In this document: positions 7,696 to 54,992 of the stretch, piece by piece
Layout: each line of letters begins with the position of its first letter
How positions within the stretch are numbered: the first letter of the stretch is position 1
NCBI RefSeq assembly: GCF_039654945.1
Contig: NW_027362023.1
Coordinates: 1 to 64,000, forward strand
Origin: Dendrobates tinctorius
Lineage: Eukaryota
Length of the DNA: 64,000 nt
Direction of reading: 5' to 3'
Position numbers and translations under genes: made by a program
The notes under the pieces: generated by a model
The model's input: only the letters and a program-made list of their open reading frames with translations
The model's database searches: none
Told to the model about the DNA's origin: nothing

Positions 7696-10600
7696 ATGCA
7701 ACTTTTACTGCGCCAGTTTCTTGCCAAAGTTTCCCATATACCAGTGCCATGCCGTAGGATGGGAGCGACAGGAATGACACCAGGCAAACTGGCATCATAC
7801 TGGGAGAAAGTCTTCTATCAACATGGGATCCCTGAACCCGAGGACTCCAGCCAAATACTAATAGCTCATGCACTGGGAGCAAAGACCGTGAGTGCAAAAT
7901 CCTGGGGGCAAAAGAGAAGTTTGAAGGAAGGGACTGAGGGGCGGGGGGGGATCTGGAGGAAGGGACTGAGGGGGGGGGGATCTGGAGGAGGGGACTGAGG
8001 GGGGGGGGATCTGGAGGAGGGGACTGAGGGGGGGGGGATCTGGAGGAAGGGACTGAGGGGGGGGATCTGGAGGAAGGGACTGAGGGGGGGGATCTGGAGG
8101 AAGGGACTGAGGGGGGGATCTGGAGGAAGGGACAGGGGGGGGGATCTGGAGGAAGGGACTGAGGGCGGGGGATCTGGAGGAAGGGACTGAGGGGGGGGAT
8201 CTGGAGGAAGGGACTGAGGGGGGGGATCTGGAGGAAGGGACTGAGGGGGGGGGATCTGGAGGAAGGGACAGGGGGGGGGATCTGGAGGAAGGGACTGAGG
8301 GCGGGGGATCTGGAGGAAGGGACTGAGGGGGGGGATCTGGAGGAAGGGACTGAGGGGGGGGATCTGGAGGAAGGGACTGAGGGGGGGGGATCTGGAGGAA
8401 GGGACTGAGGGGGGGGATCTGGAGGAAGGGACTGAGGGGGGGGATCTGGAGGAAGGGACTGAGGGGGGGGGATCTGGAGGAAGGGACTGAGGGGGGGGGA
8501 TCTGGAGGAAGGGACTGAGGGGGGGGGATCTGGAGGAAGGGACTGAGGGGGGGGGATCTGGAGGAAGGGACTGAGGGGGGGGGATCTGGAGGAAGGGACT
8601 GAGGGGGGGGGATCTGGAGGAAGGGACTGAGGGGGGGGATCTGGAGGAAGGGACTGAGGGGGGGGGATCTGGAGGAAGGGACTGAGGGGGGGGATCTGGA
8701 GGAAGGGACTGAGGGGGGGATCTGGAGGAAGGGACTGAGGGGGGGGGATCTGGAGGAAGGGACTGAGGGGGGGGGGATCTGGAGGAAGGGACTGAGGGGG
8801 GGGGATCTGGAGGAAGGGACTGAGGGGGGGGGATCTGGAGGAAGGGACTGAGGGGGGGGGATCTGGAGGAAGGGACTGAGGGGGGGGATCTGGAGGAAGG
8901 GACTGAGGGGGGGGATCTGGAGGAAGGGACTGAGGGGGGGGGATCTGGAGGAAGGGACTGAGGGGGGGGGATCTGGAGGAAGGGACTGAGGGGGGAGGAA
9001 GGGACTGGGGGGAATCTGGAGCAAGGGACTGAGGGGGGGGAAGGGACTGAGGGGGGGAATCTGGAGGAAGGGACTGAGGGGGGGGATCTGGAGGAAGGGA
9101 CTGAGGGGGGGAATCTGGAGCAAGGGACTGAGGGGGGGGAAGGGACTGAGGGGGGGAATCTGGAGCAAGGGACTGAGGGGGGGAATCTGGAGCAAGGGAC
9201 TGAGGGGGGGGATCTGGAGGAAGGGACTGAGGGGGGGGATCTGGAGGAAGGGACTGAGGGGGGGAATCTGGAGCAAGGGACTGAGGGGGGGAAGGGACTG
9301 AGGGGGGGAAGGGACTGAGGGGGGGAATCTGGAGCAAGGGACTGAGGGGGGGAATCTGGAGCAAGGGACTGAGGGGGGGGATCTGGAGCAAGGGACTGAG
9401 GGGGGGAATCTGGAGCAAGGGACTGAGGGGGGGAATCTGGAGCAAGGGACTGAGGGGGGGAATCTGGAGCAAGGGACTGAGGGGGGGGATCTGGAGGAAG
9501 GGACTGAGGGGGGGAATCTGGAGCAAGGGACTGAGGGGGGGATCTGGAGGAAGGGACTGAGGGGGGGAATCTGGAGGAGGGGACTGAGGGGCCTGGAGCA
9601 ATAGAGTTGGGGGGGGATCTGGAGGAGGGGACTGAGGGGTCTGGAGCAATAGAGTTGGGGGTGTTCTAGTGGAAGGAACTGAGGGGTCTGGAAAGGGAGG
9701 TGAGGACAAATGGGTCAGGTTTGGAGGGGAGAGAAGCGTCTGCTGTTTCATTACTTTTACTATACAGGTTCCTGTGGCTCCTCTCTGCTTCGGTGGTGGT
9801 GGTGGTGCTCTGGTTGGGGGAGTGCTCCTGTGGTGGTGGGGGGAGTTCTCCGGTCCTCACAGATCCCATTTTCTTTCTGGCAGATGCACAGTATCGGCTC
9901 CTGCGCAGCTTGGTCTCCAGTATCTACAGATCAGCTGCTGCTCGTAGAGAAAATGGCGCAAGAACGTCTGAAGAGGTGAGTCTCAGTATTAGGCCGGGAT
10001 CACACTACCGTGTGTGATGCGAGAAACTCGCACGAGTCTCTCGCATCAACACCCGGCACTAGCGCCGGCACTCAGGACCAGAGCTGCGGCTGCATAGAAA
10101 TACATACAGCCGCAGCTCCCGGTATATACGTGTATATGGTGTGCGGAGCGGCATGTCTCCGTGTGTGCGGTGTGCGGAGCGGCATGTCTCCGTGTGTACG
10201 GTGTGCGGAGCGGCATGTCTCCGTGTGTACGGTGTGCGGAGCGGCATGTCTCCGTGTGTACGGTGTGCGGAGCGGCATGTCTCCGTGTATACGGTGTGCG
10301 GAGCGGCATGTCTCCGTGTGTGCGGTGTGCGGAGCGGCATGTCTCCGTATATACTGTGTGCGGAGCGGCATGTCTCCGTGTGTACGGTGTGCGGAGCGGC
10401 ATGTCTCCGTGTGTGCGGAGCGGGAAGTCTCCGTGTGTACGGTGTGCGGAGCAGGAAACATGCAAAACACAAGCCACAGAGACACCATCACGTTTCTCAA
10501 CGCAAGCAATAACTTTTACTAGGCATTGCTCCTACTAGCCAGTTTCCTCCTCCACACTGATGAGGGGCAATACCCCGAAACAGCTGTCTGTGGATGGACA

Positions 10601-13600
10601 CCATGTTTTGGCATAGGTGGTTTCCTTCATTGGAGACTGCCCTTCCCGTGGTTGTTCCTTCCCGGGGAAAGACCTGGCTAGTCATTGCTTGCATTGAGAA
10701 ACATGATGGTGTCTCCGCGGCTTGTGTTTTATACGGTGTATGGAGTGGAGCGCGACGTCTCCACATGTATACGGAGCAGAGCGGGATGTCTCCGTGTATA
10801 CGGTGTGTGGAGCGGAGCGGGATGTCTCCATGTATACGGTGTGTGGAGCGGAGCAGGATGTCTCCGTGTATACGGTGTGTGGAGCGGAGCGGGATGTCTC
10901 CGTGTATACGGTGTGTGGAGCGGAGCGGGATGTCTCCGTGTATACGGTGTGTGGAGCGGAGCGGGATGTCTCCGTGTATACGGTGTGTGGAGCGGAGCGG
11001 GATGTCTCCGTGTATACGGTGTGTGGAGCGGAGCGGGATGTCTCCGTGTATACGGTGTGTGGAGCGGAGCGGGATGTCTCCGTGTATACGGTGTGTGGAG
11101 CGGAGCGGGATGTCTCCGTGTATACGGTGTGTGGAGCGGAGCGGGATGTCTCCGTGTATACGGTGTGTGGAGCGGAGCGGGATGTCTCCGTGTATACGGT
11201 GTGTGGAGCGGAGCGGGATGTCTCCGTGTATACGGTGTGTGGAGCGGAGCGGGATGTCTCCGTGTATACGGTGTGTGGAGCGGAGCGGGATGTCTCCGTG
11301 TATACGGTGTGTGGAGCGGAGCGGGATGTCTCCGTGTATACGGTGTGTGGAGCGGAGTGCGACGTCTCCACGTGTATACAGAGTGTGGAGCGGGATGTCT
11401 CCGTGTATACGGTGTGTGGAGCGGAGTGCGACGTCTCCACGTGTATACAGAGTGTGGAGCGGGATGTCTCCGTGTATACAGAGTGTGGAGCGGAGTGCAA
11501 CGTCTCCACGTGTATACAGAGTGTGGAGCGGGATGTCTCCGTGTATACGGTGTGTGGAGCGGAGTGCGACGTCTCCACGTGTATACTGTGTGTAGAGCGG
11601 AGTGCGACGTCTCCACGTGTATACAGAGTGTGGAGCACGATGTCTCCACGTGTATACGGTGTGCGGAGCGCGGCGTCTCCACGTGTATACGGTGTGCGGA
11701 GCGCGGCGTCTCCACGTGTATACGGTGTGCGGAGCGCGGCGTCTCCACGTGTATACGGTGTGCGGAGCGCGGCGTCTCCACGTGTATACGGTGTGCGGAG
11801 CGCGGCGTCTCCACGTGTATACAGAGTGCGGAGCGGGATGTCTCCACGTGTATACGGTGTGCGGAGCGGGATGTCTCCACGTGTATACAGAGTGCGGAGC
11901 GGGATGTCTCCACGTGTATACAGAGTGTGGAGCGCGATGTCTCCACGTGTATACAGAGTGCGGAGCGGGATGTCTCCACGTGTATACGGTGTGCGGAGCG
12001 GGATGTCTCCACGTGTATACGGTGTGCGGAGCGGGATGTCTCCACGTGTATACGGTGTGCGGAGCGGGATGTCTCCACGTGTATACGGTGTGCGGAGCGG
12101 GATGTCTCCACGTGTATACGGTGTGCGGAGCGGGATGTCTCCACGTGTATACGGTGTGCGGAGCGGGATGTCTCCACGTGTATACGGTGTGCGTAGCGGG
12201 ATGTCTCCGTGTATACGGTGTGTGGAGCGGAGCGGGATGTCTCCGTGTATACGGTGTGCGGAGCGGGACGTCTCCACGTGTATACGGTGTGCGGAGCGGG
12301 ATGTCTCCACGTGTATACGGTGTGTGGAGCGGAGCGGGATGTCTCCGTGTATACGGTGTGTGGAGCCGAGCGGGACGTCTCCACGTGTATACAGAGTGTG
12401 GAGCGCGATGTCTCCACGTGTATACGGTGTGCGGAGCGCGGCGTCTCCACGTGTATACGGTGTGCGGAGCGCGGCGTCTCCTCGTGTATACGGTGTGCGG
12501 AGCGCGGCGTCTCCACGTGTATACGGTGTGCGGAGCGCGGCGTCTCCACGTGTATACGGTGTGCGGAGCGCGGCGTCTCCACGTGTATACGGTGTGCGGA
12601 GCGCGGCGTCTCCACGTGTATACGGTGTGCGGAGCGCGGCGTCTCCACGTGTATACGGTGTGCGGAGCGGGATGTCTCCACGTGTATACAGAGTGTGGAG
12701 CGGGATGTCTCCACGTGTATACGGTGTGTGGAGCGGGATGTCTCCACGTGTATACGGTGTGCGGAGCGGGATGTCTCCACGTGTATACGGTGTGCGGAGC
12801 GCGGCGTCTCCACGTGTATACGGTGTGCGGAGCGCGGCGTCTCCACGTGTATACGGTGTGCGGAGCGCGGCGTCTCCACGTGTATACGGTGTGCGGAGCG
12901 CGGCGTCTCCACGTGTATACGGTGTGCGGAGCGCGGCGTCTCCACGTGTATACGGTGTGCGGAGCGCGGCGTCTCCACGTGTATACGGTGTGCGGAGCGC
13001 GGCGTCTCCACGTGTATACGGTGTGCGGAGCGGGACGTCTCCACGTGTATACAGAGTGCGGAGCGGGATGTCTCCACGTGTATACGGTGTGCGGAGCGCG
13101 GCGTCTCCACGTGTATACGGTGTGCGGAGCGCGGCGTCTCCACGTGTATACGGTGTGCGGAGCGCGGCGTCTCCACGTGTATACGGTGTGCGGAGCGCGG
13201 CGTCTCCACGTGTATACGGTGTGCGGAGCGCGGCGTCTCCACGTGTATACGGTGTGCGGAGCGCGGCGTCTCCACGTGTATACGGTGTGCGGAGCGCGGC
13301 GTCTCCACGTGTATACGGTGTGCGGAGCGCGGCGTCTCCACGTGTATACGGTGTGCGGAGCGCGGCGTCTCCACGTGTATACGGTGTGCGGAGCGCGGCG
13401 TCTCCACGTGTATACGGTGTGCGGAGCGCGGCGTCTCCACGTGTATACGGTGTGCGGAGCGGGATGTCTCCACGTGTATACGGAGTGCGGAGCGGGATGT
13501 CTCCACGTGTATACGGTGTGCGGAGCGCGGCGTCTCCACGTGTATACGGTGTGCGGAGCGCGGCGTCTCCACGTGTATACGGTGTGCGGAGCGCGGCGTC

Positions 13601-16600
13601 TCCACGTGTATACGGTGTGCGGAGCGCGGCGTCTCCACGTGTATACGGTGTGCGGAGCGCGGCGTCTCCACGTGTATACGGTGTGCGGAGCGCGGCGTCT
13701 CCACGTGTATACGGTGTGTGGAGCGGAGAGCGTCGATCCTGCAGGTGCACGATATACACAGCACATACAACTGAATATATGTGCGGGGGGTCGCTCCTCA
13801 CACCGGTGCTGTTCTGCCAAACAGGCAGTGGCTTTAGGGCTCGCACTGTTCTCTGTCTCCTGTGCCCTCGCTCTGTAGGCTTCCTTTGGGCAGAGCCCGG
13901 ACTCATCCTTCATATTTTTCTTGCCTCCAGGGTTCCCGTCCAGTATATAATTGGAGAATGGGACTTCCTGGACATGACGTTAGAAATGAGACCCCCAGTG
14001 CTGATCCCGAGGCCGGAGACTGAGGTAGGAGAGGGTTAGGGCTTTGTAGCTGCCTTATCTGCTCCATTATATCGCCTCCATAGCTGGAGTCTGAAATCTG
14101 CCACCTGCGTCATTAGAGACGCCATCTCCTGCTCCTCTCTTTCATACTTTACACTGCAGCTCTGCTCTGTTTCTTCAGGGAGGAGCCTCAATAGTAAGAG
14201 GGAGGAGTCTTGCGGTCGCCTGTACAGTATGGCCGTTGTAGTGATGTTGTGTCTCTGATGCAGGAGCTCGTGGGGCTGGTGGTGGCCGTCTGCGAGGAGC
14301 TGCACTGTTCTACCGAGGCCTCCGTCCTAGAGGTTGGCTGTGGATCAGGAGCTGTGTCCTTGGCGTTACTCCGGATGATCCCTCAGGTAAAGGGGCCTCC
14401 GCCGTGACGCTCACGCTCTATCCCTCCTACCGCTGTGTCCTGTGATGCCCTGTGATGAGTGGATCCTGCGCTCCCCGCATCTCCCCTGCGCTCCCCGGAT
14501 TCACCCTCTGCCTCTCCATGTCTCTTAGGTGTGCGTCATCGCCATAGATAAATCCGAGGCCGCCGTGAGTCTGACCCGTGATAATGCTGTGAGGTAGGTC
14601 CCTGAACTAGGACCGCAGAGCCGAGCGCTGCGCAGCTCCTTACTCTTTCCCTCCTTCCTCCAGGCTCGGCCTGCAGCACAGACTTCACCTCCTGCAGCAC
14701 GACATTCTGACCGGTGAGATGTGGACGCTTGGCAGCGCAGTGTCACAGACACCGTATCCGGTGCGCTACTGACCTCTTCTCTCACAACGCAGATCCCATA
14801 GAGCGACTGCTGGATCTGGGGGCCGTGTCTGCGGTGGTCAGTAACCCACCCTATATATGTACAGAAGACATGAGTCAGCTGGAGCCGGAGATCCTCAGGT
14901 GGGTGCTGTATGGGGCCGGGGGGGTCTCCTGTCTGTACCCTCCTGTTATTAGCCTGAGCTCTTCCAGCCTGTACCACGTTCCTAGATATGAAGACCACTC
15001 AGCGTTACATGGGGGTCTCGATGGGATGGATGTGATGAAGGGGATCCTACGTCTTGCACCGCTCCTGCTAAAGGATGGGGGGTAAGTGACCTCATTGGAG
15101 GACAACATCTCCAAGGAGTCTGTATGTTTCCTCCGGGTTCTCCGGTTTCTTCCCACATTCCAAAGACATACTGATAGGGAATGTAGATTGTGAGCCTCAA
15201 TGGGGACAGTGATGATAATGTCTGTAAAGCGCTGTGGAATTAATGGCGCTATATAATGAGTAGAGTAAAATAAATAAAATCATTGCGACTTCTGCAGGAT
15301 GTTCAGGGACACCAATGTCTTCTATTCCTTCAATTTCCAGGGATGTTTTTCTGGAGGGGGATCCTCGGCATCCTGAGATGGTGAAAAAATGGCTGGAAGA
15401 CCACCCAGAAGGGCGACTACAGCTCCAGAATATAGTGAAGGATTTCTGCGGCAAGTAAGTGTCCGGGAAGGCAGGGTGAGCCTTGCCGGTGTGTGTGTGT
15501 GGGGGGGGGGGCAGGGTGAGCCTTGCCTGTGTGTGTGTGTGCGTGGGNNNNNNNNNNNNNNNNNNNNNNNNNNNNNNNNNNNNNNNNNNNNNNNNNNNNN
15601 NNNNNNNNNNNNNNNNNNNNNNNNNNNNNNNNNNNNNNNNNNNNNNNNNNNNNNNNNNNNNNNNNNNNNNNNNNNNNNNNNNNNNNNNNNNNNNNNNNNN
15701 NNNNNNNNNNNNNNNNNNNNNNNNNNNNNNNNNNNNNNNNNNNNNNNNNNNNNNNNNNNNNNNNNNNNNNNNNNNNNNNNNNNNNNNNNNNNNNNNNNNN
15801 NNNNNNNNNNNNNNNNNNNNNNNNNNNNNNNNNNNNNNNNNNNNNNNNNNNNNNNNNNNNNNNNNNNNNNNNNNNNNNNNNNNNNNNNNNNNNNNNNNNN
15901 NNNNNCTGGTGTGTGTGTGGGGGGGGCAGGGTGAGCCCTGCCGGTGTGTGTGTGTGGGGGGGGCAGGGTGAGCCCTGCCGGTGTGTGTGTGTGGGGGAGG
16001 CAGGGTGAGCCCTGCCGGTGTGTGTGTGTGGGGGAGGCAGGGTGAGCCCTGCCGGTGTGTGTGTGTGTGGGGGAGGCAGGGTGAGCCCTGCCGGTGTGTG
16101 TGTGTGGGGGAGGCAGGGTGAGCCCTGCCGGTGTGTGTGTGTGGGGGAGGCAGGGTGAGCCCTGCCGGTGTGTGTGTGTGTGGGGGAGGCAGGGTGAGCC
16201 CTGCCGGTGTGTGTGTGTGGGGGAGGCAGGGTGAGCCCTGCCGGTGTGTGTGTGTGTGGGGGAGGCAGGGTGAGCCCTGCCGGTGTGTGTGTGTGTGGGG
16301 GAGGCAGGGTGAGCCCTGCCGGTGTGTGTGTGTGTGGGGGAGGCAGGGTGAGCCCTGCCGGTGTGTGTGTGTGTGGGGGAGGCAGGGTGAGCCCTGCCGG
16401 TGTGTGTGTGTGGGGGAGGCAGGGTGAGCCCTGCCGGTGTGTGTGTGTGGGGGAGGCAGGGTGAGCCCTGCCGGTGTGTGTGTGTGGGGGAGGCAGGGTG
16501 AGCCCTGCCGGTGTGTGTGTGTGTGGGGGAGGCAGGGTGAGCCCTGCCGGTGTGTGTGTGTGTGGGGGAGGCAGGGTGAGCCCTGCCGGTGTGTGTGTGT

Positions 16601-17435
16601 GTGGGGGAGGCAGGGTGAGCCCTGCCGGTGTGTGTGTGTGTGGGGGAGGCAGGGTGAGCCCTGCCGGTGTGTGTGTGTGTGGGGGAGGCAGGGTGAGCCC
16701 TGCCGGTGTGTGTGTGTGTGGGGGAGGCAGGGTGAGCCCTGCCGGTGTGTGTGTGTGTGGGGGAGGCAGGGTGAGCCCTGCCGGTGTGTGTGTGTGTGGG
16801 GGAGGCAGGGTGAGCCCTGCCGGTGTGTGTGTGTGTGGGGGAGGCAGGGTGAGCCCTGCCGGTGTGTGTGTGTGTGGGGGAGGCAGGGTGAGCCCTGCCG
16901 GTGTGTGTGTGTGTGGGGGAGGCAGGGTGAGCCCTGCCGGTGTGTGTGTGTGGGGGAGGCAGGGTGAGCCCTGCCGGTGTGTGTGTGTGTGGGGGAGGCA
17001 GGGTGAGCCCTGCCGGTGTGTGTGTGTGGGGGAGGCAGGGTGAGCCCTGCCGGTGTGTGTGTGTGGGGGAGGCAGGGTGAGCCCTGCCGGTGTGTGTGTG
17101 GGGGAGGCAGGGTGAGCCCTGCCGGTGTGTGTGTGGGGGAGGCAGGGTGAGCCCTGCCGGTGTGTGTGTGGGGGAGGCAGGGTGAGCCCTGCCGGTGTGT
17201 GTGTGTGTGGGGGAGGCAGGGTGAGCCCTGCTGGTGTGTGTGTGTGTGGGGGAGGCAGGGTGAGCCCTGCAGGCGCGGTGCAGGACTGCGCAGTGCCCAT
17301 CGGTGTAACATATGCCGTCTGTCCACATTCATACATCTTGTTGTTGCTCTCTTGTCCGGCCCCAATGTCTGACTTATGTTTATCCTCAGGCCTCGCTTCA
17401 TCCATCTACGGAGGAGACAAAGCTCTGAGCGCTGA
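7696..17435 (+). CDS. HEMK1: HemK methyltransferase family member 1 (PrmC-like release-factor glutamine methyltransferase), 325 aa, 10 coding exons
   Basis: join(7696-7887,9884-9975,13931-14024,14264-14386,14529-14593,14664-14713,14793-14898,14986-15081,15341-15454,17390-17435) = 978 nt, all GT-AG and phase-consistent. Motifs: [44 protein letters not shown] motif [35 protein letters not shown]. Start ATG follows an acceptor at 7691-7692. Confidence 0.95.
7925..9655. repeat. G-rich ~29-bp minisatellite (GGGACTGAG-G7-9-ATCTGGAGGAA) filling HEMK1 coding intron 1
   Basis: Tandem copies visible, with long G-runs on the sense strand. Confidence 0.95.
9992..10122 (+). mobile_element. Truncated PIF/Harbinger-like MITE, left arm
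   Basis: tta|GGCCGGGATCACAC start (TWA flank, GGC end) and internal hairpin gagctgcggctg...cagccgcagctc. No right TIR found. Confidence 0.45.
10464..10730 (+). mobile_element. Short non-autonomous element with 50-bp inverted arms enclosing a hammerhead ribozyme (Penelope-like/retrozyme-type)
   Basis: 10464-10513 matches the reverse complement of 10681-10730 at 45/50 positions. Hammerhead core lies between the arms. The element splits a minisatellite array. Confidence 0.7.
10548..10598 (+). ncRNA. Type I minimal hammerhead ribozyme
   Basis: Stem I TCCACA(10551-56)/TGTGGA(10589-94); core CTGATGA(10557-63); stem II GGGG-CAATA-CCCC; GAAA(10577-80); short stem III with palindromic CAGCTG; GUC triplet with predicted cleavage after C10588. 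Confidence 0.88.
15116..15280 (+). mobile_element. 5'-truncated V-SINE-like element with L2-type 3' tail
   Basis: V-domain-like tttcctccgggttctccggtttcttcccacattccaaagacat, L2-type stem-loop agcgctgtggaattaatggcgct, A-rich tail. Confidence 0.65.
15466..17272. repeat. 35-39 bp minisatellite (GGCAGGGTGAGCCCTGCC + (GT)n + GGGGGA) in the last HEMK1 intron
   Basis: Tandem copies visible; array contains an assembly gap. Confidence 0.95.
15548..15905. other. Assembly gap (358 N)
   Basis: Run of N. Confidence 1.
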
Positions 17436-18109
17436 CACTGCGAACAAGTCACTCCTGAGGTACTCATCCTTCCATACTGTTGTATCTCAGCCCTGTGCAC
17501 TGACACTGTGGACACCAGGACAAGTCGCTAGTGAGGTATCTGTCCCTCCGTATTGGTGTAGCTCCGGGAAATGAGGATGCTCTATTGAGAGTGATGCATC
17601 ATGGGAAGAAACGTGAAATGTGGCTGGAGCATGTGTGTCCCAAATATAGAAGGAACCCCCTGAACATCTTTGCCCCGGACCCCAGAAATCAGAGCCGCAG
17701 CGATCAGCCTCGAACACTGAGCACCAATGACGCTGATGTGGGTAATTCTTTGTCCATTGATCAGATCTTTATTCCAGCACCAGGGGCTGACAACTTGTCA
17801 CTCATGTATACAGGCAGGTTGTCAGCAGTGATGGATGAGGGGCAGTGTTGTAGTGTGAGGTGTGTGGTCTGATCAGTGGATGGTGGCCTGGCAGCTTTCT
17901 GTCCTCCTCCTCCCTTGGTGTCCCTCTTCCCGACGCCGTCCCTCCTCCTCCATCATCCAGGAATCCTGCACTGTTGCCAGTTCCTAGAATCCGGGTGACA
18001 AAGTCCCGTCCGTCCTGGAGATCTTTCCTGGAATTCAGCAATGAATGACGAGGGTGGAAATTGTCTGACTCTCCCTGATGTCATGTATGATGGCGTCTGC
18101 TCTGTGTGT

Positions 18110-20135
18110 CGCCGGCTCTGTGGGGTGTCTTCTCTGTGGGTCTCCGGCTCTTGTGGGTCTCCGGCTCTTGTGGGTCTCCGGCTCTTGTGGGTCTCCGGCT
18201 CTTGTGGGTCTCCGGCTCTTGTGGGTCTCCGGCTCTTGTGGGTCTCCGGCTCTTGTGGGTCTCCAGCTCTTGTGGGTCTCCGGCTCTTGTGAGTTACCTT
18301 CTCTGTGGGTCTCCGGCTCTTGTGGGTCTCCGGCTCTTGTGGGTTACCTTCTCTGTGGGTCTCCGGCTCTTGTGGATCTCTGGCTCTGTGGGTCTCCGGC
18401 TCTTGTGGGTCTCCGGCTCTTGTGAGTTACCTTCTCTGTGGGTCTCCGGCTCTGTGGGTTTCCGGCTCTTGTGGGTCTCCGGCTCTTGTGAGTTACCTTC
18501 TCTGTGGGTCTCTGGCTCTTGTGGGTCTCCGGCTCTTGTGGGTTACCTTCTCTGTGGGTCTACGGCTCTTGTGGATCTCCGGCTCTGTGGGTCTCCGGCT
18601 CTTGTGGGTCTCCGGCTCTTGTGAGTTACCTTCTCTGTGGGTCTCCGGCTCTGTGGGTTTCCGGCTCTTGTGGGTCTCCGGCTCTTGTGAGTTACCTTCT
18701 CTGTGGGTCTCCGGCTCTTGTGAGTTACCTTCTCTGTGGGTCTCCGGCTCTTGTGAGTTACCTTCTCTGTGGGTCTCCGGCTCTTGTGAGTTACCTTCTC
18801 TGTGGGTCTCCGGCTCTTGTGAGTTACCTTCTCTGTGGGTCTCCGGCTCTTGTGAGTTACCTTCTCTGTGGGTCTCTGGCTCTTGTGGGTCTCCGGCTCT
18901 TGTGGGTCTCCGGCTCTTGTGGGTCTCCGGCTCTTGTGGGTCTCCGGCTCTTGTGAGTTACCTTCTCTGTGGGTCTCCGGCTCTTGTGAGTTACCTTCTC
19001 TGTGGGTCTCCGGCTCTTGTGAGTTACCTTCTCTGTGGGTCTCCGGCTCTTGTGAGTTACCTTCTCTGTGGGTCTCCGGCTCTTGTGAGTTACCTTCTCT
19101 GTGGGTCTCCGGCTCTTGTGAGTTACCTTCTCTGTGGGTCTCCGGCTCTTGTGAGTTACCTTCTCTGTGGGTCTCCGGCTCTTGTGAGTTACCTTCTCTG
19201 TGGGTCTCCGGCTCTTGTGAGTTACCTTCTCTGTGGGTCTCCGGCTCTTGTGAGTTACCTTCTCTGTGGGTCTCCGGCTCTGTGGATCTCCGGCTCTGTG
19301 GGTCTCCGGCTCTTGTGAGTTACCTTCACTGTGGGTCTCCGGCTCTGTGGGTCTCCAGCTCTGTGGGTCTCCGGCTCTTGTGGGTCTCCGGCTCTTGTGA
19401 GTTACCTTCTCTGTGGGTCTCCGGCTCTTGTGAGTTACCTTCTCTGTGGGTCTCCGGCTCTGTGGGTCTCCGGCTCTTGTGGGTCTCCGGCTCTTGTGAG
19501 TTACCTTCTCTGTGGGTCTCCGGCTCTTGTGAGTTACCTTCTCTGTGGGTCTCCGGCTCTTGTGGGTCTCCGGCTCTTGTGGGTCTCCGGCTCTTGTGAG
19601 TTACCTTCTCTGTGGGTCTCCGGCTCTTGTGAGTTACCTTCTCTGTGGCTCTCCGGCTCTTGTGAGTTACCTTCTCTGTGGCTCTCCGGCTCTTGTGAGT
19701 TACCTTCTCTGTGGCTCTCCGGCTCTTGTGAGTTACCTTCTCTGTGGGTCTCCGGCTCTTGTGAGTTACCTTCTCTGTGGGTCTCCGGCTCTTGTGAGTT
19801 ACCTTCTCTGTGGGTCTCCGGCTCTTGTGAGTTACCTTCTCTGTGGGTCTCCGGCTCTTGTGAGTTACCTTCTCTGTGGGTCTCCGGCTCTGTGGGTCTT
19901 CGGCTCTGTGGGTCTCCGGCTCTGTGGGTCTCCGGCTCTTGTGAGTTACCTTCTCTGTGGGTCTCCGGCTCTTGTGAGTTACCTTCTCTGTGGGTCTCCG
20001 GCTCTTGTGAGTTACCTTCTCTGTGGGTCTCCGGCTCTTGTGAGTTACCTTCTCTGTGGGTCTCCGGCTCTGTGGGTCTCCGGCTCTTGTGAGTTACCTT
20101 CTCTGTGGGTCTCCGGCGCTGTGGGTCGCCCGCGC
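18110..20135. repeat. Composite minisatellite of 17-bp (GTGGGTCTCCGGCTCTT) and 16-bp (GTGAGTTACCTTCTCT) subunits
   Basis: Tandem copies visible. Pure 17-mers give way to 33-bp composite units. Confidence 0.95.
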
Positions 20136-21181
20136 TGTGGATGAGGCTTTTAGTGCTGTAGTTTTTCTTAGTTGATGATTTGTACGGTTCTCTGGCCGGG
20201 CGGCGGGAATCTTAATATTTTTCTGAATCTGTTGTGTTTCGCTCTTCATTATGTAAAGTGGCCAAATCAATGACTTCCGTGTGCTTCACGTTCTCACGGC
20301 CTCCGCTTGCTGTCAGTGAATGGAAACCTCTTGTCCGCAGCTTTACCTTCCCTGGAGCTAAGCCTCGGCTTTATTCTGCCATGATGGATTTTAAGCCTGA
20401 CAGCAATCAGAGATCGTAATGATGGAAGATTAAAATGTAAAAGCTGTTGCAGAGTTGCAGAGCATTCTTTTATTAAGGTCTGATTGTATTTTTTTTGGTG
20501 GGGGGGTGAGAAGCACAATACCTGCCGCTGTGTTTTAGACTGTAGCGTCTTCCATTGCCGCCTGGGAAGTCGGATGGATCAGCGGCGACGACTCCGCTGA
20601 TCAGTACAGAGATGATACAGTGTAACTCGCCATTGGATAAATGGTAAGCTCCTTATTACCATGGCAACGGGAATATAAAATGTTCGCTAAAGGAACAAGC
20701 CAGAGCCACGACGTGCAGAGATTATTACAGGGGTCCGTGATAATGAGGTACACTACAATACCAGAGTCAGAGATGGCAAAGACTCTGCGTTCATACTAAT
20801 CAGTCACTGGCAACATCCGGACCTGATCGTACAGAAAGTCTGATCGTCCGCCACTTTGACCGTTAGATATTATAGGAGGTGGGTCGTCATTTCAGAAGCC
20901 CCCTCACCCTGAAGACCCTCGGCCCAATAATACATGCCCGGGGAGGTGGTTCTCTATGATCCGGAGCAGATGTGTGTGAGCAGGGATTCCAGGAAATCCC
21001 ATACCCGGCGGCCTTAAGGGAATCGCAGCCCCTGGACTCTGCTGAAGAGGGGATTTGTTTAGTAGATTCAGGACTGCGGAAAATTCTGTCTTTCCAGGGA
21101 ATGTTTATGATCTAGAAGCATTTCTGGAAAATGGATCAATAACAATTCATGGAAGAGTCAAGACGGAAAAAATCAGCGGCA

Positions 21182-23086
21182 GGCAGCGGAGGTCCCCGAC
21201 CGAGCACTGCACCCCCTACAGGGGAGAAAAGCGGGAGATCAAATCCACAGAAGGGATCAGAGGCCGACAAGTCAGCTCTCACCCTGATTACCAAGAATCG
21301 ACCATGCCAAATGTGGCAGCGGAGGTCCCCGACTGAGCACTGCACCCCCTACAGGGGAAAAAAGGGGGAGATCAAATCCACATAAGGGATCAGAGGCCAA
21401 CAAGTCAGCTCTCACCCTGATTACCAAGAATCGACCATGCCAAATGTGGCAGCGGAGGTCCCCGACCGAGCACTGCACCCCCTACAGGGGAAAAAAGGGG
21501 GAGATCAAATCCACAGAAGGGATCAGAGGCCAACAAGTCAGCTCTCGCCCTGATTACCAAGAATCGACAACGCCAAATGTGGCAGCGGAGGTCCCCGACC
21601 GAGCACTGCACCCCCTACAGGGGAAAAAAGGGGGAGATCAAATCCACAGAAGGGATCAGAGGCCAACAAGTCAGCTCTCGCCCTGATTACCAAGAATCGA
21701 CAACGCCAAATGCGGCAGTGGAGGTCCCCGACCGAGCACTGCACCCCCTACAGGGGAAAAAAGGGGGAGATCAAATCCACAGAAGGGATCAGAGGCCGAC
21801 AAGTCAGCTCTCGCCCTGATTACCAAGAATCGACAACGCCAAATGCGGCAGCGGAGGTCCCCGACCGAGCACTGCACCCCCTACAGGGAAGAAAAGGGGG
21901 AGATCAAATCCACAGAAGGGATCAGAGGCCGACAAGTCAGCTCTCGCCCTGATTACCAAGAATCGACCACGCCAAATGTGGCAGCGGAGGTCCCCGACCG
22001 AGCACTGCACCCCCTACAGGGAAGAAAAGGGGGAGATCAAATCCACAGAAGGGATCAGAGGCCGACAAGTCAGCTCTCGCCCTGATTACCAAGAATCGAC
22101 CACGCCAAATGTGGCTGCGGAGGTCCCCGACCGAGCACTGCACCCCCTACAGGGGAGAAAAGGGGGAGATCAAATCCACAGAAGGGATCAGAGGCCGACA
22201 AGTCAGCTCTCGCCCTGATTACCAAGAATCGACAACGCCAAATGTGGCAGCGGAGGTCCCCGACCGAGCACTGCACCCCCTACAGGGGAGAAAAGGGGGA
22301 GATCAAATCCACAGAAGGGATCAGAGGCCGACAAGTCAGCTCTCGCCCTGATTACCAAGAATCGACAACGTCAACTGCGGCAGCGGAGGTCCCCGACCGA
22401 GCACTGCACCCCCTACAGGGGAAAAAAGGGGGAGATCAAATCCACAGAAGGGATCAGAGGCCGACAAGTCAGCTCTCGCCCTGATTACCAAGAATCGACA
22501 ACGTCAACTGCGGCAGCGGAGGTCCCCGACCGAGCACTGCACCCCCTACAGGGGAGAAAAGGGGGAGATCAAATCCACAGAAGGGATCAGAGGCCGACAA
22601 GTCAGCTCTCGCCCTGATTACCAAGAATCGACAACGTCAACTGCGGCAGCGGAGGTCCCCGACCGAGCACTGCACCCCCTACAGGGGAAAAAAGGGGGAG
22701 ATCAAATCCACAGAAGGGATCAGAGGCCGACAAGTCAGCTCTCGCCCTGATTACCAAGAATCGACAACGCCAACTGCGGCAGCGGAGGTCCCCGACCGAG
22801 CACTGCACCCCCTACAGGGGAGAAAAGGGGGAGATCAAATCCACAGAAGGGATCAGAGGCCGACAAGTCAGCTCTCGCCCTGATTACCAAGAATCGACAA
22901 CGTCAACTGCGGCAGCGGAGGTCCCCGACCGAGCACTGCACCCCCTACAGGGGAGAAAAGGGGGAGATCAAATCCACAGAAGGGATCAGAGGCCGACAAG
23001 TCAGCTCTCGCCCTGATTACCAAGAATCGACAACGCCAAATGTGGCAGTGGAGGTCCCCGACCGAGCACTGCACCCCCTGCAGGGA
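21182..23086. repeat. 133-bp tandem repeat, ~14 copies
   Basis: ORF track recurs at exact 133-bp offsets; units near-identical. Confidence 0.97.
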
Positions 23087-54350: not shown

Positions 54351-54486
54351 ATATACACGGTATTATCTCCTCTTCAGAGAGGTAGAGAGCTCTAGCGCCA
54401 CCTAATGGAAGGCACAATCCTATTGGTCAGTGTCGACCCCTTAACGAGTCTCGTCACAGGTCTTCGGGTAAGAAGCCAAGCCAGAC

Positions 54487-54539
54487 TCTCCGTTGGCAGA
54501 CACGAGTTTCGGGGTGTTTGCTCCTCATCAGTGGAAGGA
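54487..54539 (-). ncRNA. Diverged type I hammerhead ribozyme motif
   Basis: Minus strand: TTCCA-CTGATGA-GGAG CAAACA CCCC-GAAA-CTCGTG-TC-TGCCAACGGA. Core intact; one stem II mismatch; stem I interrupted. Confidence 0.6.
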
Positions 54540-54992
54540 ACGTCGTATGATGGGGGGGATGGATCTCCTTGTGGGGAGCACCAGGCCGGTGTATGAAGCC
54601 TTACAGGGTCTGAGCACAAGGAGAGATGTTACCTCTTTTTGTATGACAGAAGTGGAAATCTGCTCTGGCTGTGAGGGTCTGCTCATAGAGGTGGTCTTCT
54701 GTTTAAAGGCACAGTACCGCTGACTCTTCTAACTTGTGCTCTGCAGGGTCTGTGGCTCTTTCACACAGCGACTTGTCAGTGGGATTGATGGGACAGATCT
54801 TCAGGATTGCTGGTGGTTAATGGCAGCGGCAGTCCAGGGGTTAATGGTCGGCTAGCTCCTCCTCGGTGCTGCCTCCTCCTGTCCTCCGCTCCCCTCCTTT
54901 GTGGAAGAGCAGATTTACTGTGGGAGTCGCAGGCACCAGGACTTTAGCACCGAGCTGTCGCCATGAGGTTGCTGCTTGCTCGAGAGTCTTGA

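What the first reader, a model, noticed from the sequence alone, without database searches (positions are those of the whole stretch)
10548..10598. Intact minimal hammerhead ribozyme in sense orientation inside a HEMK1 intron
Seen: every conserved core nucleotide is present (CUGAUGA, GAAA, GUC), with a perfect 6-bp stem I (extendable by TCC/GGA after one bulge), a 4-bp GC stem II and a very short stem III whose sequence CAGCUG is palindromic. Known: minimal type I hammerheads with short palindromic stem III are typical of Penelope-like elements, retrozymes and amphibian satellite transcripts, and cleave best as dimers. Inference: it is transcribed with every HEMK1 pre-mRNA, so it could cut coding intron 2 after C10588, possibly only when a partner copy from the same family pairs in trans. 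That would couple retroelement expression to processing of a mitochondrial translation-factor methyltransferase transcript.
Basis: partly seen in the sequence, partly recalled or inferred. Interest (0 to 1): 0.88.

Follow-up and report, generated by a model that had tools for sequence, protein, structure and literature searches.

The report
Solo retrozyme hammerhead copy in intron
The hammerhead ribozyme motif is real and lies in sense inside a HEMK1-like intron, but it is one of about 7,700 letter-identical copies of a 352-base repeat family already known from amphibians, and nothing suggests it regulates the host gene.

Summary
Window 10551-10594 (+) has the full type I hammerhead core, a 6-bp helix I, a 4-bp GC helix II and a 2-bp helix III inside the palindrome ACAGCUGU. 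It lies in sense, 575 nt into a 3,955-nt intron of a HemK-type methyltransferase gene.

It is not special to this gene. The same 42-nt ribozyme occurs 7,730 times in this 6.36-Gb genome, against 0 for the reversed control. It belongs to a 352-nt unit found in head-to-tail arrays and in many solo insertions. This matches the known non-LTR retrozymes and amphibian satellite hammerheads.

The window copy is a young, partial, solo insertion into a minisatellite. A direct segment carrying the ribozyme is joined head-to-head to an inverted 59-nt segment of the same unit. That junction explains the "51-nt inverted arms". Sister insertions show the same two-arm build with 12-16-bp target duplications, the signature of Penelope-like elements.

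Folding predicts an inactive monomer (-20.1 against -14.9 kcal/mol for the ribozyme fold). The native fold appears only as a dimer, through an 8-bp intermolecular helix III. A neighbouring non-ribozyme 42-mer is kept more often (11,843 copies), so intactness reflects youth, not selection. No RNA-end data could be obtained. The proposed coupling to HEMK1 processing is unsupported. The scan had also noted the 267-nt unit and a second hammerhead in this window.

The parts
10551..10594 (+). Type I hammerhead motif: helix I 10551-10556/10589-10594, core CUGAUGA 10557-10563, helix II 10564-10567/10573-10576 with loop CAAUA, GAAA 10577-10580, helix III inside the palindrome ACAGCUGU 10580-10587, C17 = 10588. 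Predicted cleavage between 10588 and 10589.
   Evidence: Rfam RF00163, full model, 20.2 bits, below the gathering score of 34.
10513..10730 (+). Direct segment of the 352-nt retrozyme-like unit, from unit position ~277 through the cleavage site to ~144. It is 97-98% identical to many genomic copies.
   Evidence: hits covering query 59-276 at 97-98%; L001 1559-1776, + u277->u144; alignment.
10456..10514 (-). Inverted partial copy of the same unit (unit positions ~92-152), joined head-to-head to the direct segment. With 10680-10730 it forms the 51-nt, 90% complementary inverted arms.
   Evidence: arms 10464-10514 / 10680-10730; L001 1502-1560, - u152->u92.
10129..10452 (.). Left part of the 31-nt minisatellite into which the element inserted.
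   Evidence: period 31, 10.7 copies.
10747..13725 (.). Right part of the same minisatellite (period 33, 88 copies). It fills most of the intron.
9976..13930 (+). Host intron of the HemK-type methyltransferase gene. The upstream exon ends at 9975 and the downstream exon is 13931-14024.
   Evidence: The Pfam scan of single exons was uninformative.

Best explanation
Window 10456-10730 is a young, solo, partial insertion of a high-copy non-LTR retrozyme-like repeat. The repeat has a 352-nt unit with one type I hammerhead per unit. The element landed in a minisatellite inside a HEMK1-like intron. In the family, tandem transcripts would let neighbouring ribozymes pair through the palindromic helix III, cut out unit-length RNAs, and be copied back into DNA by Penelope-like-element machinery. 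That machinery cuts and extends both target strands, which gives head-to-head inverted arms and target duplications. The intronic copy is a passenger. Its ribozyme is intact because the insertion is recent. As a lone monomer it should fold into an inactive alternative and cleave poorly or not at all. Any cut would fall in an intron that is removed anyway. Shown here: the motif, its copy number, the tandem unit, the insertion architecture and the gene context. Inferred: RNA processing, mobilisation by Penelope-like elements, and low activity of the solo copy.
For: There are 7,730 exact copies of the 42-nt ribozyme and 0 for the control. Arrays have periods of 351-354 nt, for example 5 or more units in L014 and 22.5 units in L031. 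The window copy differs from the family only at 10549, 10599, one G>A near 10690 and a 2-nt deletion, with none of these in the 42-nt ribozyme. A control 42-mer from the same unit has 11,843 exact copies, so the ribozyme is not kept better than its neighbours. Among 95 sampled copies, substitutions hit core and stems alike. In 18 of 19 two-arm insertions the arms are head-to-head, with outer ends at unit positions ~150 and ~275. Target duplications of 12-16 bp flank L003, L004, L005, L006, L010 and L012. GIY-YIG/Penelope-like reading frames are abundant in the genome, with 5,686 first-look candidates and open frames up to 855 aa. Folding gives the monomer ribozyme fold -14.9 against a minimum of -20.1 kcal/mol, in which CUG of the core pairs with CAG of helix III. 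The dimer minimum of -45.7 kcal/mol is the double hammerhead with an 8-bp helix III. Literature: metazoan type I hammerheads have a 6-bp helix I, a 4-bp helix II and a 1-2-bp helix III with a palindromic loop, and are active as dimers (PMC4209133). Amphibian retrozymes are 330-350 nt, weak as monomers and efficient as dimers (PMC7229834). Penelope-like insertions have inverted 5'-truncated copies and a bias for microsatellites (PMC8557442). A Penelope-like protein cleaves and extends both strands and initiates internally (PMC11167929).
Against: No RNA data show that the family is transcribed or cleaved in this species. The runs that hold it are contigs of uncertain kind, and they span the cleavage site. 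The 352-nt unit showed no blastn similarity to 30 sampled Penelope-like loci, so the autonomous partner is not identified. The window copy has both outer ends near unit position 150, unlike 18 of 19 sisters. Its own target duplication cannot be told apart from the periodic minisatellite. Two private changes (10549, 10599) lie in distal helix I and lengthen it, with unknown effect on activity.
Confidence: 0.85

Rival explanations
1. One reading: the intronic hammerhead cuts HEMK1 pre-mRNA after C10588, mainly when a family RNA pairs with it in trans through the palindromic helix III. This would tie retroelement expression to HEMK1 output.
For: The motif is intact and in sense. The dimer minimum-energy structure is the native double hammerhead, about 5.5 kcal/mol better than two monomers. 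Thousands of potential partner copies exist. The preprint reports depletion of retrozymes from introns relative to intergenic DNA, which is compatible with some cost.
Against: No RNA evidence was obtained. The copy shows no constraint. Bimolecular pairing in the nucleus depends on high partner concentration. Only 1 of 9 predicted Xenopus dimers cleaved in vitro. From general knowledge, not tested here: a slow cut inside an intron is tolerated because exons stay tethered to RNA polymerase II. About 44% of Xenopus copies sit in introns.
Confidence: 0.07
2. The relevant feature is the hairpin, not the ribozyme. The 51-nt inverted arms form a long double-stranded stem in the pre-mRNA that feeds small-RNA or editing pathways.
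For: The arms are 90% complementary over 51 nt. The 276-nt fold is -129.9 kcal/mol with the arms paired. Rfam miRNA-precursor models align weakly to the hairpin, MIR172 at 27.6 bits and MIR869 at 25.2 bits, both far below gathering.
Against: The Rfam matches are to plant families and are generic hairpin hits. The arms are explained as a by-product of the insertion mechanism seen in the sampled sister loci. There are no small-RNA data.
Confidence: 0.05
3. A chance match to the hammerhead consensus with no ribozyme ancestry.
For: The Rfam score is below gathering.
Against: There are 7,730 identical copies against 0 for the control. There is one per unit of a tandem family. A second, related hammerhead family lies in the same genome. 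The full Rfam model aligns.
Confidence: 0.01

Closest known systems
Non-LTR retrozymes of amphibians (axolotl Rtz331/Rtz353; newt satellite 2 transcripts)
   Same: The unit is ~350 nt in head-to-tail arrays, with one type I hammerhead per unit. Helix I is 6 bp, helix II is 4 bp, and helix III is 2 bp capped by a palindromic tetraloop. Dimer-dependent folding is predicted. There are thousands of copies, including solo monomers (PMC7229834).
   Different: The sequence family belongs to this genome, and no sequence comparison with the published families was possible here. Expression as linear or circular RNA is not shown. The window copy is a partial solo unit with an inverted arm, not a tandem.
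Penelope-like elements and their hammerhead-bearing pseudo-LTRs
   Same: Shared features are partial tandems, an adjacent inverted 5'-truncated copy, two defined outer ends, variable target duplications, insertion into a mini- or microsatellite, and a hammerhead in the repeat (PMC8557442, PMC11167929, PMC4209133).
   Different: There is no RT/GIY-YIG reading frame in or next to the element. There is no blastn similarity to 30 sampled Penelope-like loci. The two outer ends are ~125 nt apart, whereas the published 'tail' is 30-40 bp. The ribozyme has a real, if short, helix III, unlike the 'min-HHR' of many Penelope-like elements.
Conserved intronic hammerheads of amniotes (Rfam HH9, HH10)
   Same: A hammerhead in sense inside an intron of a protein-coding gene.
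   Different: Those are single-copy, kept at orthologous sites and stable as monomers. This one is a recent copy of a repeat, has an unstable helix III and gave no HH9/HH10 match.

Membership tests
Hammerhead ribozyme, type I (Rfam RF00163) | Conserved core: CUGANGA, GAAA, and a cleavage triplet ending in H17 after U16.1 | tested here: met
   CUGAUGA 10557-10563, GAAA 10577-10580, GUC 10586-10588.
Hammerhead ribozyme, type I (Rfam RF00163) | Three helices around the core, with helix I open-ended | tested here: met
   Helix I 6 bp (+3 after a bulge), helix II 4 bp, helix III 2 bp, all standard pairs. The helix III hairpin adds +0.8 kcal/mol, so it is unstable as a monomer.
Hammerhead ribozyme, type I (Rfam RF00163) | Score at or above Rfam's gathering threshold (34 bits) | tested here: not met
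   20.2 bits, E 0.0049 on 76 nt, full-length alignment. No hit in the gathering scan.
Hammerhead ribozyme, type I (Rfam RF00163) | Mg2+-dependent self-cleavage at the predicted site | not testable with these tools
   Only contigs were available, and they cannot show RNA ends.
Non-LTR retrozyme | Short tandem repeats (150-450 bp), each carrying a type I hammerhead | tested here: met
   Met for the family: 352-354-nt arrays in L014, L015, L031 and many places. The window copy itself is a solo partial unit, a monomer derivative.
Non-LTR retrozyme | Expressed as unit-length linear and circular RNA | tested here: inconclusive
   Runs of two organisms hold family sequence, but whether they are RNA is a guess. 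No RNA-Seq-labelled run was listed.
Non-LTR retrozyme | Retrotransposon-type insertions with target site duplications | tested here: met
   12-16-bp duplications in L003, L004, L005, L006, L010 and L012. In the window the flanks are a periodic minisatellite, so the duplication is ambiguous.
Penelope-like element (autonomous) | Single reading frame with telomerase-like RT and GIY-YIG endonuclease between pseudo-LTRs | tested here: not met
   No such reading frame in the element. The unit has no similarity to 30 GIY-YIG loci of this genome.
Penelope-like element (insertion signature only) | Partial tandems plus an adjacent inverted 5'-truncated copy, with different outer ends on the two sides | tested here: met
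   18 of 19 two-arm insertions have ends at ~u150 and ~u275 in opposite orientation. The window copy is inverted but has both ends near u150.
Conserved intronic hammerhead (HH9/HH10 type) | Single-copy, kept at the orthologous intron across species | tested here: not met
   Single-copy is not met: 7,730 copies. Orthologous conservation was not tested, since no related genome was at hand.

The most novel reading that the evidence does not exclude
The solo intronic hammerhead is switched on in trans by abundant unit-length RNA of its own family, through the 8-bp palindromic helix III. Bursts of retrozyme expression would then cut HEMK1 pre-mRNA, and the pre-mRNAs of the many other genes with sense intronic copies. 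This would be a genome-wide link between repeat expression and host transcript integrity.
Probability: 0.05. Interest if true: 0.6.

Novelty: new member of a known kind. Interest (0 to 1): 0.15.

Why it matters
For HEMK1 it matters little, because the ribozyme is a recent passenger of a very abundant repeat. The family is more useful than the single copy. It offers thousands of near-identical insertions with clean boundaries. Those boundaries (two-arm inverted build, two fixed outer ends, target duplications, one array starting at the ribozyme cut site) bear on an open question: how animal retrozymes are mobilised, and whether Penelope-like enzymes do it.

Tried and rejected
- The Rfam gathering scan of the whole window found nothing. 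The first E-value scan kept only a misregistered Hammerhead_3 match at 15.9 bits, because of clan competition. A narrow scan gave the correct Hammerhead_1 alignment.
- The MIR172/MIR869 matches were rejected as generic hairpin hits to plant families, far below gathering.
- RNA evidence: 20 listed runs hold part of the stretch, all as Logan contigs of unknown kind. Laid on 10455-10740, they carry the family letters (A at 10549, T at 10599), not the window copy's, and give no ends. A second search restricted to 'RNA-Seq' listed none.
- Link to Penelope-like elements by sequence: blastn of the unit against 30 GIY-YIG loci found nothing. This is a small sample out of 5,686 candidates, so it is not evidence of absence.
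- The 2,124-nt spacing of exact motifs on C3 looked like a longer element. It is a plain 354-nt array in which only some units carry the exact 42-mer.
- Pfam on single exon peptides was uninformative. Gene identity rests on the HemK motifs GEWDF, PRPETE and NPPY, and on frame-correct splice sites.
- The reading of 10464-10730 as a 267-bp mobile unit with terminal inverted repeats was rejected. The unit is 352 nt, and the arms are two copies of unit positions ~92-152 in opposite orientation.
The N run 15548-15905 was left untouched.

Full report
**Observation.** The sequence at 10551-10594 on the + strand reads TCCACA-CUGAUGA-GGGG-CAAUA-CCCC-GAAA-CAGCUG-UC|UGUGGA.
Helix I has 6 bp and gains three more (C10550-G10596, C10549-G10597, U10548-A10598) if U10595 bulges. 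Helix II has four G-C pairs. Helix III is A10580-U10587 plus C10581-G10586, inside the 8-nt palindrome ACAGCUGU.
- The predicted cut is after C10588.
- Rfam's gathering scan of the window found nothing. On a narrow stretch, Hammerhead_1 (RF00163) aligns its whole model to 10551-10594 at 20.2 bits, E 0.0049, below the gathering score of 34.
- Chance is excluded. A relaxed core pattern matches three times in the window against 0.16 expected. The exact 42-mer occurs 3,870 + 3,860 times in the 6.36-Gb genome, against 0 for the reversed control.

**Gene context.** On the + strand an exon ends at 9975 (..[14 protein letters not shown], donor GT 9976-9977).
- The next exon starts at 13931 after AG 13929-13930. 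It reads (R)[31 protein letters not shown] up to 14024. An NPPY motif follows at 14843.
- These are the hallmarks of HemK/PrmC-type glutamine methyltransferases, identified from my own knowledge of the family. Pfam on single exons gave nothing useful.
- The ribozyme therefore lies in sense, 575 nt into a 3,955-nt intron.
- Most of that intron is a 31-33-nt minisatellite (10129-10452 and 10747-13725).

**What the element is.** A search of the window's own genome with 10455-10740 gave at least 1,594 first-look candidates. The best matches cover query 59-276 at 97-98% identity.
- The sampled loci show a 352-nt unit in head-to-tail arrays, each unit carrying the same ribozyme. L014 has five or more units, L031 has 22.5 units of 354 nt, and one search lists runs of twenty or more.
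- This matches the non-LTR retrozymes and amphibian satellite hammerheads. Those have tandem units of ~330-350 nt and a type I ribozyme with a 6-bp helix I, a 4-bp helix II and a 1-2-bp helix III capped by a palindromic loop. They are weak as monomers and efficient as dimers (PMC4209133; PMC7229834).

**Anatomy of the window copy.** Against four natural units of L014, the window holds a direct segment 10513-10730 (unit ~277 through the cut site to ~144). It is joined head-to-head to an inverted segment 10456-10514 (unit ~152 down to ~92).
- The 51-nt, 90% complementary arms found are therefore two copies of the same part of the unit in opposite orientation. They are not terminal repeats of a 267-bp mobile unit.
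- The build is typical of the family. In 18 of 19 two-arm insertions the arms are head-to-head, with outer ends near unit positions 150 and 275. Target duplications of 12-16 bp flank six of the loci read by eye (L003, L004, L005, L006, L010, L012).
- Penelope-like elements are known for partial tandems, an adjacent inverted 5'-truncated copy, an extension at one end only, and a bias for microsatellite targets (PMC8557442).
- A purified Penelope-like protein cleaves and extends both target strands and starts reverse transcription at internal sites of its RNA (PMC11167929).
- GIY-YIG reading frames of up to 855 aa are abundant in this genome. The unit showed no blastn similarity to the 30 loci sampled, so the partner is not identified.

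**Is this copy special?** No.
- It differs from the family at 10549 (C for A), 10599 (C for T), one G>A near 10690 and a 2-nt deletion. None of these lie in the 42-nt ribozyme. At about 2% divergence, zero changes in 42 nt is what one expects by chance.
- Family-wide the ribozyme is not kept better than its surroundings. A control 42-mer from the same unit has 11,843 exact copies against 7,730. That comparison is partly confounded by 5' truncation.
- Among 95 sampled ribozyme copies, substitutions hit core and stems alike.

**Would it cut?** ViennaRNA gives the monomeric ribozyme fold -14.9 kcal/mol. The minimum-energy fold is -20.1 kcal/mol, in which CUG of the core pairs with CAG of helix III. 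The helix III hairpin itself costs +0.8 kcal/mol.
- Two copies together have as their minimum (-45.7 kcal/mol) exactly the double hammerhead with an 8-bp intermolecular helix III.
- A lone intronic copy would therefore need a partner RNA in trans.
- Published tests caution against equating intact motifs with activity. Single minimal motifs did not cleave. Axolotl monomers cleaved weakly. Only one of nine Xenopus retrozyme dimers cleaved in vitro.
- About 44% of Xenopus retrozyme copies lie in introns, so the position is ordinary.
- No RNA evidence was obtainable. The runs holding the family are contigs of uncertain kind, carry family rather than copy-specific letters, span the cut site and cannot show ends. 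No RNA-Seq-labelled run was listed.

**Verdict.** The identification as a retroelement-type, dimer-dependent type I hammerhead is correct. The proposed coupling to HEMK1 processing is unsupported and unlikely. This is a new member of a known kind, of low interest as a single locus.

**Operator rules.** The N run 15548-15905 was not touched. Read laying received 286 letters.

Noticed in passing
L002-L030 (family loci), e.g. L003:1385-1790, L004:1376-1778, L012:1496-2144: In 18 of 19 two-arm insertions of the 352-nt family, the arms are head-to-head inverted. One outer end lies near unit position 150 (..GTGTTTTGCATG) and the other near 275 (..CATCCTCATTTT). Target duplications of 12-16 bp flank six of the loci read by eye. 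This looks like the Penelope-like 'both strands primed, tail at one end' signature, but with ends ~125 nt apart. It could serve as structural evidence for how animal retrozymes are mobilised.
   Followed up: partly
L014:1200-1230: A tandem array of five or more units begins almost exactly at the ribozyme cut site (..TTTTTTTTAAAAAAAACAGTC|TGTGGATGG..) next to a T8A8 tract. This is as expected if the template RNA's 5' end was made by self-cleavage.
   Followed up: no
window 54484-54531 (-), within 54365-54670: A second hammerhead from a different, older family (~79% identity to other copies, at least 1,056 candidates; the 262-nt spacing between two motifs in L064 suggests tandem copies). Family copies read UUUGCA-CUGAUGA-GGGG-CAGUA-CCCC-GAAACACAGUGUC-UGCAAA. 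The window copy is degenerate, with an A-C mismatch in helix II and a broken helix I.
   Followed up: partly
G000:C3:7803771-7813897: About 10 units in minus orientation are directly followed by about 20 units in plus orientation. This is the same head-to-head build as the solo insertions, but with long arrays on both arms.
   Followed up: no
L031:342-7361 (-): Each 354-nt unit of this 22-unit array holds a 97-aa open frame on the strand opposite to the ribozyme. It is probably mechanical and was not examined.
   Followed up: no
window 7925-9639, 15909-17270, 18099-20140, 21182-22000+: The region is unusually rich in minisatellites: a 27-28-nt G-rich array just upstream of the exon at 9887, then arrays of 39 nt, 17/33 nt and 133 nt. 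A run of 358 N lies at 15548-15905.
   Followed up: no
window 10549 and 10599: The two private substitutions of the window copy both lie in the distal part of helix I. Together they turn an A-G mismatch into a C-G pair, lengthening helix I where type I hammerheads usually have the loop that contacts loop 2. The effect on activity is unknown.
   Followed up: no
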